In this document: one piece after another, positions 4,285 to 6,001 of the stretch
How positions within the stretch are numbered: the stretch's first letter is position 1
Layout of the letters: the number at the start of each line of letters is the position of its first letter
IMG/VR virus record: IMGVR_UViG_3300048927_000250
Location: 62,001 to 126,000 of that record
Length of the DNA stretch: 64,000 bases
Strand: one strand, 5' to 3'
Program-made: the position numbers and the translations under genes
Notes under the pieces: generated by a model
Database searches by the model: none
What the model was told of the DNA's origin: nothing
Seen by the model: only the letters and a program-made list of their open reading frames with translations

Positions 4285-4300
4285 CTCCGTAGTTTTAACA
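4285..4300 (-). repeat. 16-bp translation-start module, copy 3
   Basis: Exact copy. Confidence 0.9.
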
Positions 4301-4307
4301 GGGGTAC

Positions 4308-4670
4308 TTAGTGAATCTGCATCATGACTTCGGTGAGGGCAGGGGACGCCTTCCCAACGATGGTGTAGGTCCGCTCGGTGTCGAGCGCCATTGCTGCTAC
4401 ACATTCTTCTTTCAACTTTTCCGTGACGATAATGCGGCGTTGCTCATCCGTGAAGTGAATGAGGGAATGGGTGGTGGGGTCGAAGAAGTAGCTCCCCGCC
4501 ACTTTGCTGAGCGTGAATTCAAAATCACACACGCCGACGGCAATGTATTCTTTAAAGGCGTGCTGCATGGCCTCTATCAACTTGTGGTTAATGCGCACTT
4601 CCACATCGCATTCATTATCCACGACATTCAATTTACCCTGGGTGTGAATGCAAAAATGATACTGTTGCAT
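4308..4670 (-). CDS. Hypothetical protein (120 aa; start moved to ATG 4670)
   Basis: Repeated module GGAG 9 nt before ATG 4670. Confidence 0.8.
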   Translation of the reverse strand: MQQYHFCIHTQGKLNVVDNECDVEVRINHKLIEAMQHAFKEYIAVGVCDFEFTLSKVAGSYFFDPTTHSLIHFTDEQRRIIVTEKLKEECVAAMALDTERTYTIVGKASPALTEVMMQIH

Positions 4671-4679
4671 GAGGTTATT

Positions 4680-4695
4680 CTCCGTAGTTGTAACA
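4680..4695 (-). repeat. 16-bp translation-start module, copy 4 (TGTTACAACTACGGAG)
   Basis: One mismatch to the other three copies. Confidence 0.85.
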
Positions 4696-4731
4696 TTGAT
4701 ATCTAGGGGTTTAGTACCCTTATTCACCGAG

Positions 4732-4742
4732 AGAATATATAC
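4732..4742 (-). promoter_or_regulatory. Possible early promoter (GTATATATTCT)
   Basis: Resembles the GTCTATATTAC motif found at 7397, 19681, 20622 and 54270; heads the left early cassette. Confidence 0.4.
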
Positions 4743-4764
4743 TTCAAAATCCTTTAGATAGGGA

Positions 4765-4883
4765 ATAAAGAAAGAATCTCCCCTCCAGCCAAAAGACGTA
4801 AAGTCTCTTGACTAAAGGGGTGCGAGCCTAATAGCAGGAAGATGCTGAACGGGAGACTTTACAACCGTTCTCATCCACTCGCA
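4765..4883 (-). ncRNA. Candidate structured sRNA / attenuator with terminator-like 18-bp stem and loop-loop complementarity
   Basis: Stem 4820-4803/4797-4780 pairs fully only on the minus strand (4 G.U); hairpin 4875-4841 has loop GTAAAGTCTC (4862-4853) complementary to GAGACTTTAC (4807-4798); P1 4883-4877/4827-4821. Confidence 0.6.
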
Positions 4884-4913
4884 TAAAGAGTGGACCGGCT
4901 GTAAAAAATGAGT

Positions 4914-5981
4914 TTAAGCAATGGCGGCGTAAGGGTACATCTGCTTCGCCAGGGATTTCAAACTGGTGGTCGCAGTGAAGTGACCGGAGACAGTGAGCAT
5001 CCGATTGTACAACGTATCGGTAACCATCAGCTTCTTCACGTCGTTTGACGCGCCATTGAACACAGAGAGGTTGCGGGGGTTGGTGGCTTTGAAAGACAGG
5101 CGGTCCCAGTTCGCATTGAAGCGGGTGAGAATCGCCACCAGTTCGTTCTTGTACTTGCTGTAGTCAGCGGCCAGTGCCCCTACCGGTAAACGGTAGTAGC
5201 TGATGATGTCGGTCACCGCCGTCGGGTAACGTTGCAGAACGAAGTCGACCCCGAGGTGGTCGAGCATACTGTTGAGGATGGTGACGTCGCCGTTCTGTAC
5301 TGCGAAATCGAACTGGTCGATTAACGCCGTTTTCATTACCACGTCATTCGGGTTGGTGCTCATCACCCGGTCAATGATGTTGGTCATCCCCAGACGGGCG
5401 GCGTTGGTCAGGATACTGACACGCATCGCGTAATCCGAGGCACTGTCTTTGATGCGCCCGAATTCTTCACCTGGCAAATCCAGCAAACGGTTACTGGTTT
5501 CAATCAGGTTGTTGATTTCGGGGACAGTGGCACCCAAAGCAACCTTGAGGAAACTGTTCCCGTTCTGTACCTGGTCGAAGGGAAGTTTGTTCAGGTTATT
5601 CAACTGACCCTGTATCTGACTTTGCAGGTCACTGGACATCCCTTTGATGGTCCCGATGGTTCCATCCAGTGCCGAGTTCAACTGAGTGGTCAGGGCAGTG
5701 ACGTCTTCCCGTACTTCTTTCGCCGTAGCCAATGCATCGTTCAGGGAACCGAGGTCCCCAATCTTCGTGTTGAAGAGGAAGTTCTTGGCGGCGGCTATCT
5801 TGTTCTGGATGGTGTTCGACATCCCGGTGAGGGTGTCTTTCGCTGTCTTCCCGTAACCATCGACCGTCATCAACGCGTCTTTGGCTTTGGTGGTCATCAG
5901 CGTACTGCCTGCCTGCACCGACTTCGTGGCACTGCTGGCTGCCGTTTTGGCGTCGCTCAATTTGCTGGTAATGTCTACCAT
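4914..5981 (-). CDS. Probable virion structural protein (355 aa)
   Basis: Ala/Thr/Ser-rich helical N-terminus, strong codon bias, position among phiKZ-like late genes. Confidence 0.6.
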   Translation of the reverse strand: MVDITSKLSDAKTAASSATKSVQAGSTLMTTKAKDALMTVDGYGKTAKDTLTGMSNTIQNKIAAAKNFLFNTKIGDLGSLNDALATAKEVREDVTALTTQLNSALDGTIGTIKGMSSDLQSQIQGQLNNLNKLPFDQVQNGNSFLKVALGATVPEINNLIETSNRLLDLPGEEFGRIKDSASDYAMRVSILTNAARLGMTNIIDRVMSTNPNDVVMKTALIDQFDFAVQNGDVTILNSMLDHLGVDFVLQRYPTAVTDIISYYRLPVGALAADYSKYKNELVAILTRFNANWDRLSFKATNPRNLSVFNGASNDVKKLMVTDTLYNRMLTVSGHFTATTSLKSLAKQMYPYAAIA

Positions 5982-6001
5982 GGTAGCGTCCTCGATGAGA
6001 C

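What the first reader, a model, noticed from the sequence alone, without database searches (positions are those of the whole stretch)
4765..4905. Candidate RNA switch / kissing-loop sRNA between a late gene and the early cassette
Seen: on the minus strand CCCCUUUAGUCAAGAGAC-UUUAC-GUCUUUUGGCUGGAGGGG forms an unbroken 18-bp stem with four G.U pairs (mismatches on the plus strand, which fixes the orientation), followed by AGAUUCUUUCUUU (terminator-like). Upstream, hairpin GAUG-a-GAACGG-[UUGUAAAGUCUC]-CCGUUC-ag-CAUC (4875-4841) displays a loop whose 10 nt are the exact complement of the apex of that stem (4807-4798). CAGCCG (4901-4896) can also pair with the stem's 3' arm, so two mutually exclusive folds exist. 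A TATG (phiKZ-type late start motif) lies at 4885-4882, and the bases starting there (GCGAGU) pair with GCUCGC at 4827-4822, closing a compact ~115-nt RNA. Inference: either an attenuator gating read-through from the late gene into the early cassette, or a free late sRNA whose complementary loops could pair in trans into oligomers (as phi29 pRNA does). I do not recognise it as a known RNA family.
Basis: partly seen in the sequence, partly recalled or inferred. Interest (0 to 1): 0.82.

Follow-up and report, generated by a model that had tools for sequence, protein, structure and literature searches.

The report
Structured small RNA gene in jumbo phage
Between a virion gene and an early-gene cassette of a PhiEaH1-like Erwinia jumbo phage lies what looks like a small RNA gene of its own (promoter, about 115-nt folded RNA, long terminator hairpin), with a hairpin loop that stays complementary to the tip of its own terminator in every relative found; it is a new example of the short non-coding RNAs recently seen in phiKZ-like phages, and its function is unknown.

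Summary
The 18-bp G.U-containing hairpin (4820-4780) is kept as an 18-21 bp strand-specific hairpin in five diverged metagenomic relatives, with many compensatory changes. The 10-nt loop/apex complement (4862-4853 with 4807-4798) is the longest complement at the homologous place in all six sequence types (10, 10, 8, 7, 8, 8 nt), made with partly different bases.

TATG (4885-4882) belongs to a conserved motif, TCATTTTTTAC-N15-TATG. Its relaxed form occurs six times in the PhiEaH1 genome, always intergenic and on the gene strand, and it resembles the phiKZ middle/late promoter layout. The closing stem starts exactly at the G of TATG.

My best reading is a self-contained, non-virion-RNA-polymerase-driven small RNA that shares its terminator with the upstream virion gene and sits just before an AT-rich early promoter (4743-4731). 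The loop-apex pairing is about isoenergetic with the closed terminator tip. It could be a tertiary contact or a tuner of termination.

An attenuator role is not excluded. pRNA-like oligomers have no support. Rfam has no match. Nothing is tested in vivo.

The parts
4914..5981 (-). Upstream gene, 355 aa. It is a homologue of phiKZ gp174 (structural protein) and of the 'virion-associated protein' of Serratia phage Moabite. Stop codon TAA at 4916-4914.
4901..4911 (-). TCATTTTTTAC, the upstream promoter element. Its TTAC lies at -22 to -19 relative to G4882.
   Evidence: It is invariant at a fixed 15-nt distance from TATG in six homologue types, and similar in the 51-53 % relatives. The relaxed motif has six hits in PhiEaH1, all intergenic and on the gene strand (checked against the annotation). 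The phiKZ middle promoters carry AAanTTACc at about -24 (PMC4666361).
4882..4885 (-). TATG. G4882 is the predicted +1 of the small RNA, by analogy with phiKZ nvRNAP promoters.
   Evidence: The closing helix P1 begins exactly at this G here, and the same holds for the unrelated RNAs at the same slot in L012 and L013/L017. No 5' end has been mapped.
4873..4895 (-). P0: a hairpin GUCCACUC / GAGUGGAU with UAUG in its loop. It exists only in transcripts arriving from upstream, and it excludes P1/P2.
   Evidence: It is present in all six homologue types with three different sequence solutions (-7.6 to -12 kcal/mol). It is absent at other promoters of the same class.
4822..4882 (-). 5' domain of the RNA, a three-way junction. 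P1 is 4882-4877 with 4827-4822. P2 is 4876-4872 with 4844-4840. P3 is 4870-4865 with 4852-4847. P4 is 4837-4836 with 4829-4828.
   Evidence: Minimum-energy fold from +1. RNAalifold on an unfitted MAFFT alignment of five close sequences gives 19 pairs, none broken, 2 compensatory and 5 half-compensatory. L009 and L011 fold this part differently.
4853..4864 (-). The 12-nt loop of P3. GUAAAGUCUC (4862-4853) is complementary to the terminator apex. The core GUCU is invariant in all six homologue types; GUCUC is kept in five of six (L007 has GUCUA).
4780..4820 (-). T: an 18-bp hairpin with 4 G.U pairs and loop UUUAC. It is the predicted intrinsic terminator for both the small RNA and the upstream virion-gene transcript.
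   Evidence: It is 18-21 bp with 3-4 G.U pairs in all six types. On the model-fitted alignment, 8 of its 18 pairs change on both sides and 100 % of cells pair.
4798..4807 (-). GAGACUUUAC: the top five pairs of the 5' arm plus the loop of T. This is the partner of the P3 loop.
   Evidence: GAGAC...GUCU at the apex is invariant while the lower stem varies.
4761..4779 (-). U-rich tail AGAUUCUUUCUUUAUUCCC after T. It is conserved in 5 of 6 homologue types.
4731..4743 (-). AGTATATATTCTC: an AT-rich early-type promoter candidate for the downstream small-gene cassette.
   Evidence: Six such sites occur in PhiEaH1, all on the minus strand. Three share the leader that follows. phiKZ early promoters are AT-rich (PMC10914365).
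4668..4730 (-). Conserved leader (GGTGAAnnAGGGTACTAAACCCC), the box TGTTACAACTACGGAG (4695-4680), and ATG 4670-4668, the likely true start of the first cassette gene.

Best explanation
The spacer is a small transcription unit of its own. A phiKZ-type promoter for the phage's non-virion RNA polymerase (TCATTTTTTAC-N15-TATG) starts an RNA at G4882. The RNA folds into a three-way junction (P1-P4) followed by a long G.U-rich hairpin T and a U-rich tail, where it ends after about 113-116 nt. The same hairpin also ends transcripts of the upstream virion gene and insulates the early cassette, which has its own AT-rich promoter 35 nt further on. The P3 loop pairs with the apex of T by opening its weak top. 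This gives a compact pseudoknotted ('kissed') RNA whose two states are close in energy.

Shown: the sequence features, their conservation and co-variation, the promoter-like motif's intergenic and strand-specific distribution, and the lack of coding potential.

Inferred: the start site, termination, the existence of a discrete RNA, the tertiary pairing, and any function. The function is probably regulatory, in trans or through the terminator.
For: Phage type:
- The window is 98 % identical to Erwinia phage PhiEaH1. That phage carries split multisubunit RNA polymerase genes and a tubulin-like gene, so it is phiKZ-like.

Promoter:
- The spacing TTTTTAC-15-TATG is invariant in six homologue types whose flanking protein is 71-100 % identical.
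- The same layout is seen in 51-53 % relatives with unalignable intervening sequence.
- The relaxed motif hits PhiEaH1 six times, all intergenic and on the gene strand.
- phiKZ nvRNAP starts at the G of TATG, and middle promoters add a TTAC element near -24 (PMC4666361).

Discrete RNA:
- P1 starts exactly at that G and closes just before T.
- The unrelated RNAs in the same slot in L012 and in L013/L017 have the same architecture: a closing stem from +1, then a terminator. In L013/L017 this is 57 pairs, 0 broken, 6 compensatory.
- A second promoter + ~115-nt RNA + terminator unit exists at PhiEaH1 3751-3640.
- phiKZ and 201phi2-1 make such short RNAs, two of the phiKZ ones confirmed by northern blot (PMC10914365, PMC11512511).

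Structure:
- z = -6.2.
- On the model-fitted alignment 98 % of cells pair against 83 % in shuffles, and 18 of 37 pairs change on both sides.
- T is strand-specific in all six types.

Loop-apex pairing:
- It is the longest complement at the homologous site in all six types, with shuffle P of 0.001-0.09.
- It is kept by different bases: GUAAAGUCUC/GAGACUUUAC, then GUAAGUCU/AGACUUAC (one base lost on each side), then GUCUCUCU/AGAGAGAC.
- The duplex is worth -11.5 to -15 kcal/mol against +10 to +12.7 to open the top of T.

Other:
- Non-coding: the 20-codon ORF is not conserved.
- The RNA body diverges as fast as or faster than the coding flank (54-86 % against 68-81 %), so structure rather than sequence is constrained.
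Against: - No transcript ends have been mapped for this phage or any close relative.
- The overall count of the promoter-like motif is not above mononucleotide-shuffle expectation (6 against 5.1 +/- 2.2 on both strands). Only its placement is non-random.
- There are only six independent sequence types, so no formal covariation statistic such as R-scape is possible.
- The alignment behind one search was fitted to the model, and L009 and L011 score weakly (E = 3e-6 and 6e-4).
- P1-P4 are not kept in L009 and L011.
- A 10-bp helix made by a 12-nt loop is sterically strained, and nearest-neighbour energies ignore this.
- The U-tract is interrupted and begins after AGA.
- The conserved P0 hairpin uses bases upstream of the proposed start. 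This argues that read-through transcripts also matter.
Confidence: 0.5

Rival explanations
1. Transcription attenuator or conditional terminator. The P3 loop acts as an antiterminator that captures the emerging top of the terminator's 5' arm. This lowers termination and lets non-virion polymerase run from the TATG promoter (or from the virion gene) into the early cassette at middle or late times. Which fold forms may depend on where the transcript began (P0 against P1/P2).
For: - The upstream segment pairs with the 5' arm by perfect Watson-Crick pairs, while the terminator's own top has G.U pairs or an A.C mismatch.
- The two states are near-isoenergetic in all six types.
- Premature termination just downstream of promoters, with partial read-through, is documented in phiKZ 5'UTRs (PMC10914365).
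- P0 is conserved and excludes P1/P2.
- The loop segment is predicted to be more accessible in the short than in the long transcript in 5 of 6 types.
Against: - The complement covers only the top 5-8 pairs plus the loop. The lower 11-13 pairs, with a G-C-rich base next to the U-tract, can still form.
- There is no conserved sensing element: no Rfam aptamer, the leader ORF is not conserved, and the 5' domain differs in L009 and L011.
- The cassette has its own conserved early promoter.
- The pairing of UUUACAGCCG with the loop region, which would sequester the loop, is kept only in the window, L006 and partly L007.
- Relatives with unrelated RNAs in this slot show no such complement.
Confidence: 0.25
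2. An elaborate 3' untranslated region and insulating terminator of the virion-gene operon. No separate RNA is made. The loop-apex complement and P0 only stabilise or process the mRNA 3' end, or are fortuitous.
For: - T is the first terminator-like element after the stop codon.
- P0 is conserved and uses bases upstream of TATG.
- Other early promoters in the genome are also preceded by a terminator.
Against: - Elsewhere in the genome terminators follow the stop codon directly and are short G+C-rich tetraloop hairpins. Here 95 nt intervene, and they carry a motif that is otherwise only found upstream of genes.
- P1 starts exactly at the G of TATG, here and in non-homologous RNAs in the same slot.
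- The complement persists through sequence change.
Confidence: 0.15
3. A DNA-level element: inverted repeats bound by a protein that controls the adjacent promoters, or a replication or packaging site at the module boundary.
For: - GTCTC / GAGAC / GTCTT half-sites and a palindrome flank TATG.
- The GenBank record of vB_Ea277G starts, and two metagenomic contigs end, 10-70 nt after T.
Against: - G.U pairs make the hairpin strand-specific in all six types, a 10-13 kcal/mol difference. DNA duplex recognition does not explain this.
- The lower stem co-varies over 13 pairs.
- There is no GC-skew inflection.
- The contig ends fall at different bases.
- The element is unique in the genome.
Confidence: 0.05
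4. A free RNA that assembles into dimers or rings through intermolecular loop-apex pairing, as phi29 pRNA does.
For: There is only the 7-10 nt complement between two hairpins of the same molecule.
Against: - Half of the apex partner is buried in the stem.
- The phage encodes a large terminase and is unrelated to phi29-like phages.
- No RNA component of the packaging motor is known in phiKZ-like phages (my own knowledge).
Confidence: 0.03

Closest known systems
Short non-coding RNAs of phiKZ and 201phi2-1 produced by a terminator placed just downstream of a promoter. Examples are the 71-nt RNA before PHIKZ221, the 141-nt intergenic RNA before PHIKZ302, and sRNA005 of 201phi2-1 (PMC10914365, PMC11512511).
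   Same: The host is a phiKZ-like jumbo phage with its own polymerases. The layout is a promoter followed within about 70-250 nt by a terminator, in an intergenic or 5'UTR position, and the function is unknown.
   Different: There is no sequence or Rfam relationship. The locus lies after the gp174 homologue, where phiKZ has a convergent head-protease gene. Here the RNA shares its terminator with the upstream gene, is followed by a separate early promoter, and carries a conserved loop/terminator-apex complement that I did not see mentioned in the passages of those papers that I read.
Bacterial type I 3'UTR-derived small RNAs such as DapZ and MicL (named from my own knowledge, not tested here).
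   Same: An internal promoter sits at the end of, or just after, the upstream gene, and the terminator is shared with the mRNA. A short conserved single-stranded motif could serve as a seed.
   Different: The polymerase and promoter are the phage's own. Hfq dependence and targets are unknown. The only complement of the loop in the 64-kb window is the RNA's own terminator.
Terminator/antiterminator attenuators and pseudoknot riboswitches, for example fluoride and preQ1 (from my own knowledge).
   Same: An upstream segment can pair with the 5' arm of the terminator, and the two folds are mutually exclusive and of similar energy.
   Different: There is no conserved aptamer, no ligand, and no leader peptide. 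Only the top third of the stem is contested.
phi29 prohead RNA (pRNA).
   Same: It is a phage RNA of about 120 nt with complementary loops.
   Different: Here the complement is between a loop and a mostly paired stem tip of the same molecule. The phage family and packaging machinery are different, and there is no homology.

Membership tests
phiKZ-type promoter-proximal-terminator small RNA | The host phage has phiKZ-like split multisubunit RNA polymerases. | tested here: met
   PhiEaH1 is annotated with several RNA polymerase beta/beta' fragments and a tubulin-like protein. The upstream gene is a gp174 homologue.
phiKZ-type promoter-proximal-terminator small RNA | A phage promoter motif (TATG at +1, optionally TTAC near -20 to -24) lies directly upstream. 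| tested here: met
   The motif is present, conserved at fixed spacing, and found only in intergenic, gene-strand positions genome-wide. This is sequence evidence only.
phiKZ-type promoter-proximal-terminator small RNA | A terminator lies within about 250 nt of the start, and a discrete short transcript is seen in vivo. | not testable with these tools
   A terminator-like hairpin begins 62 nt after the predicted start. No transcriptome exists for this phage.
Intrinsic (factor-independent) terminator | A stable stem-loop is followed immediately by a U-tract. | tested here: inconclusive
   The stem is worth -28 kcal/mol with 4 G-C pairs at its base. The tail is U-rich but starts with AGA and is interrupted by C and A. 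The stem is far longer and more A/U- and G.U-rich than the other terminators of the window.
Riboswitch / known cis-regulatory RNA family | A match to a curated covariance model, or a conserved ligand-binding core. | tested here: not met
   There is no Rfam hit up to E = 10 in the window region and none in six relatives. The 5' domain is not conserved in L009 and L011.
Leader-peptide attenuator | A conserved short ORF whose translation decides the fold. | tested here: not met
   The 20-codon ORF 4874-4812 is frame-shifted in L006 and has no AUG in L007.
Terminator/antiterminator switch (generic) | An alternative helix is incompatible with the terminator stem and conserved across relatives. | tested here: inconclusive
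   It is conserved in all six types and is isoenergetic with the stem top. It leaves 11-13 basal pairs free to form.
phi29-type pRNA | A phi29-like phage, with the RNA bound to the connector and interlocking loops that form rings. | tested here: not met
   This is a phiKZ-like jumbo phage with a large terminase. There is no Rfam pRNA hit. Ring formation is not testable here.
tRNA / tmRNA | A cloverleaf recognised by ARAGORN. | tested here: not met
   No tRNA or tmRNA was found in the window.

The most novel reading that the evidence does not exclude
The element is a factor-independent switch that senses where a transcript began. Transcripts arriving from the virion-gene operon fold P0, which hides the 5' strand of P1/P2 and partly hides the loop segment, and they terminate fully at T. 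Transcripts born at the internal TATG promoter fold P1-P3, display the loop, capture the nascent terminator apex, and partly read through into the 'early' cassette. The phage could thus re-express early genes late, from a promoter only 100 nt upstream of a strong terminator.
Probability: 0.12. Interest if true: 0.75.

Novelty: new member of a known kind. Interest (0 to 1): 0.5.

Why it matters
Non-coding RNAs of nucleus-forming jumbo phages have only just begun to be catalogued, and none has a known function. This locus offers a compact candidate (about 115 nt) supported by comparative evidence, with a clear testable feature: a loop that co-varies with the tip of its own terminator. It also has a natural series of variants, and unrelated structured RNAs occupy the same genomic slot in sister clades.

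It also provides sequence-level candidates for two promoter classes, plus a leader/ribosome-binding box, in the Iapetusvirus group, for which no transcription map exists. If the pairing tunes termination, it would show how phage-encoded multisubunit polymerases are regulated at a late/early module boundary. If not, it is still a new phage RNA family worth adding to Rfam.

Tried and rejected
- Rfam scans of the region and of six related loci gave nothing relevant. ARAGORN gave nothing.
- Repeated-element idea: the hairpin and the whole RNA are unique in the window and in the 218-kb PhiEaH1 genome.
- Leader peptide: the ORF is not conserved.
- Replication origin: there is no GC-skew inflection at the locus.
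- P0 as a general promoter hairpin: it is absent at the other promoters of the class.
- Loop-apex complement as a general design of RNAs in this slot: it is absent in L012, L013, L017 and in the second PhiEaH1 unit.
- Homology between the short and long RNAs: the covariance model finds none.
- More relatives:
  - GenBank phages hold only three near-identical records with a 100 % identical spacer.
  - An IMG/VR pattern scan returned only chance hits.
  - Protein-guided scans of IMG/VR and JGI metagenomes added only 52 % relatives.
  - Extra cluster members were near-identical to L007 and L011.
- A pseudoknot count with the count of structure pairs was not attempted, because the model-fitted alignment puts the compensating one-base deletions in different columns. 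The pairing was counted per sequence instead.

Full report
WHAT THE WINDOW IS. Window 4300-6000 is 98 % identical to Erwinia phage PhiEaH1 (Iapetusvirus, 218 kb) and to vB_Ea277G. PhiEaH1 is annotated with several split RNA polymerase beta/beta' genes and a tubulin-like gene, which are marks of phiKZ-like phages. Genes around the finding lie on the minus strand.

The gene ending at 4914 (355 aa) is a homologue of phiKZ gp174 ('structural protein') and of a 'virion-associated protein' of Serratia phage Moabite. Downstream lie about 16 small hypothetical genes. In phiKZ, SPLA10 and PCH45 the gp174 homologue is followed instead by a convergent head-protease gene. The junction studied here is therefore specific to the PhiEaH1 clade.

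THE OBSERVATION.
- The 18-bp stem 4820-4780 has four G.U pairs and loop UUUAC.
- The U-rich tail is 4779-4767.
- The hairpin 4875-4841 has a 12-nt loop.
- There is an exact 10-nt complement between 4862-4853 and 4807-4798.
- TATG is at 4885-4882.
- GCGAGU pairs with GCUCGC at 4827-4822.

The spacer folds at -58.1 kcal/mol, z = -6.2 against shuffles. The long hairpin is strand-specific: -28.2 kcal/mol sense against -15.7 antisense. Rfam has no match and ARAGORN finds nothing.

RELATIVES. GenBank and IMG/VR copies have a 100 % identical spacer and are uninformative. A search with the 355-aa protein found metagenomic relatives at 88, 88, 76, 75, 71, 53, 52 and 51 % identity. Their contigs were fetched.

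Five of them (L006, L007/L030, L010, L009, L011) have an alignable spacer of the same length. A covariance model built from the window and L006 recovers all of them. It finds nothing else in the whole PhiEaH1 genome or in the more distant loci.

PROMOTER. In all six sequence types TTTTTAC is followed after exactly 15 nt by TATG, while the bases between vary. The 51-53 % relatives have the same layout, (T-rich)-[T/C]AC-N14-TATG, in otherwise unalignable sequence. In L013 and L017 it occurs twice, once before the non-coding stretch and once before the next gene.

In PhiEaH1 the relaxed pattern occurs six times. The count is not above shuffle expectation (5.1 +/- 2.2), but all six lie on the gene strand and in the few intergenic gaps, upstream of genes (checked).

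In phiKZ the non-virion polymerase starts at the G of TATG, and middle promoters carry AAanTTACc centred near -24 (PMC4666361). I therefore take G4882 as the likely +1. This is an inference, since no ends have been mapped.

Independent support is that the closing helix P1 begins exactly at this G. The same is true of the unrelated RNAs found at this slot in L012 and in L013/L014/L017/L019. That last RNA is a 237-nt domain closed from +1, with 57 predicted pairs, none broken and 6 compensatory.

STRUCTURE OF THE RNA. From +1 the minimum-energy fold of the window, L006, L007 and L010 is P1 (6 bp), P2 (4-5 bp), P3 (6 bp, with a 12-14 nt loop), a small P4, then the long hairpin T.
- RNAalifold on an unfitted MAFFT alignment of the five closest sequences predicts 19 pairs, none broken, two compensatory and five half-compensatory.
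- On the model-fitted alignment of six types, 98.1 % of cells pair (shuffles 83.1 %, slid controls 40-57 %). Eighteen of 37 pairs change on both sides. T alone has 8 such pairs of 18 and 100 % pairing.
- That alignment leans towards the model, and L009 and L011 score weakly.
- L009 and L011 fold their 5' part differently.
- T is 18-21 bp with 3-4 G.U pairs in every type, and 10-13 kcal/mol weaker on the other strand.
- Its apex GAGAC...GUCU never varies, while the lower stem is rebuilt from different bases.
- The RNA body is no more conserved than the coding flank (54-86 % against 68-81 % identity). The region after T, which holds the early promoter and leader, is more conserved at 75-82 %.

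THE LOOP-APEX COMPLEMENT. For each type I searched for the longest Watson-Crick complement between the part upstream of T and the 5' arm plus loop of T. In all six it falls at the homologous place.

| Type | Upstream segment | Partner in T | Length |
|---|---|---|---|
| window, L006 | GUAAAGUCUC | GAGACUUUAC | 10 nt |
| L007 | GUAAGUCU | AGACUUAC | 8 nt |
| L010 | AAGUCUC | GAGACUU | 7 nt |
| L009, L011 | GUCUCUCU | AGAGAGAC | 8 nt |

- In L007 one base is lost on each side. The helix reaches 9-10 pairs if the first base of the 3' arm and a G.U pair are allowed.
- In L010 it reaches 9 pairs with one bulge.
- Shuffle probabilities, in the order window, L006, L007, L010, L009, L011, are 0.001, 0.0014, 0.014, 0.088, 0.016 and 0.026.
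- The sequences are related, so these probabilities do not multiply. Still, the helix is kept by partly different bases, sliding towards the loop in one lineage and into the stem in the other.
- Nearest-neighbour energies give -11.5 to -15 kcal/mol for the duplex and +10 to +12.7 to unpair the same bases of T. The net is -0.7 to -4.6, so the closed tip and the kissed state are about equal in all six. Steric cost is not included.
- The complement is not found in the unrelated RNAs of sister clades or in the second PhiEaH1 unit.

A SECOND ALTERNATIVE FOLD. When sequence upstream of TATG is included, a hairpin P0 (4895-4888 with 4880-4873, UAUG in the loop) forms and uses the 5' strands of P1/P2. 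All six types have such a hairpin, built from three different sequences (-7.6 to -12 kcal/mol). Other promoters of the class do not. So transcripts coming from the virion gene would fold differently from transcripts born at TATG. The loop segment is predicted to be more open in the short RNA in five of six types. This is weak evidence.

DOWNSTREAM. AGTATATATTCTC (4743-4731) belongs to six similar AT-rich sites in PhiEaH1, all on the minus strand. Three share a conserved leader. This fits the AT-rich early promoters of phiKZ (PMC10914365). The cassette therefore has its own promoter, and T separates it from middle or late transcription.

INTERPRETATION. The best-supported reading (0.5) is a self-contained small RNA gene. 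It has a promoter for the non-virion polymerase, a structured RNA of about 115 nt, and a terminator shared with the virion gene. The conserved intramolecular loop-apex pairing either compacts the RNA or tunes its terminator. Short RNAs made by a terminator just after a promoter are documented in phiKZ (71 and 141 nt, confirmed by northern blot) and in 201phi2-1 (eleven candidates) (PMC10914365, PMC11512511). A second such unit exists at PhiEaH1 3751-3640.

An attenuator (0.25) is not excluded. However, only the top third of T is contested, no sensor is visible, and the cassette has its own promoter.

The other rivals are:
- a mere 3'UTR/terminator (0.15);
- a DNA-level site (0.05);
- pRNA-like oligomers (0.03).

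Each is weighed in the Rival explanations section.

NOVELTY AND SCORE. The kind (a promoter-proximal-terminator small RNA of a phiKZ-like phage) is known. This family, its position and its self-complementary loop/terminator design are new, and nothing is known of its function. Interest is 0.5. It is a well-supported candidate with a clean experimental handle, but the evidence is sequence-only and rests on six sequence types.

Noticed in passing
window 4695-4680, 4300-4284, 1531-1516, 1003-988 (minus strand); also PhiEaH1 130806, 84851, 40999: A 16-nt box TGTTA[A/C]AACTACGGAG lies 8-12 nt before the ATG of at least seven small genes. It looks like a conserved leader/ribosome-binding box of the small-gene cassettes.
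   Followed up: partly
window 4668-4727 (minus strand): The first cassette gene is annotated in PhiEaH1 from a GTG (window 4727). The conserved box and the spacing in relatives point to ATG 4670-4668 as the real start.
   Followed up: partly
window 4743-4731 (minus strand); PhiEaH1 84898, 41761, 31657, 15823, 10230: Six AT-rich sites AGTATATATT[C/A][T/C]C, all on the minus strand, are candidate early (virion-polymerase) promoters. Three share the leader GGTGAAnnAGGGTACTAAACCCC.
   Followed up: partly
L025 (PhiEaH1) 3776-3640, minus strand, outside the window: A second TTTTTAC-N15-TATG promoter is followed by about 115 nt of non-coding, structured sequence and a canonical terminator, upstream of a macrodomain (Appr-1-p processing) gene. 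This is another small-RNA candidate.
   Followed up: partly
L013:4094-4365, L014, L017:1169-1440, L019:3582-3854; L012:4222-4420: In relatives whose gp174 homologue is 51-53 % identical, the same slot holds unrelated, longer structured RNAs. One is a 237-nt domain with 57 predicted pairs, 0 broken and 6 compensatory, followed by a terminator. L012 has one of about 190 nt. Each is closed by a stem that starts at the G of TATG. There is no Rfam match.
   Followed up: partly
L005 (vB_Ea277G record end = window 4754); ends of L006 and L010: The GenBank record of vB_Ea277G starts, and two independent metagenomic contigs stop, 10-70 nt after the terminator. This could be chance, an assembly artefact at a strong hairpin, or a physical end.
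   Followed up: no
window 12992-12967, 8013-7988, 6029-6010, 3486-3470: The ordinary terminator-like hairpins of this phage are short G+C-rich stems with tetraloops and a T-run. The 18-bp A/U- and G.U-rich hairpin of the finding is atypical among them.
   Followed up: no
L003 (SPLA10), L004 (PCH45), L044 (phiKZ): In these phages the gp174 homologue is followed by a convergent head-protease gene. The small RNA plus early cassette is therefore a rearrangement junction specific to the PhiEaH1 clade.
   Followed up: partly
L012:4100-4205: In L012 a 35-codon ORF with a good ribosome-binding site lies between the gp174 homologue and the TTTTTAC-TATG promoter. It is absent from the other relatives.
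   Followed up: no
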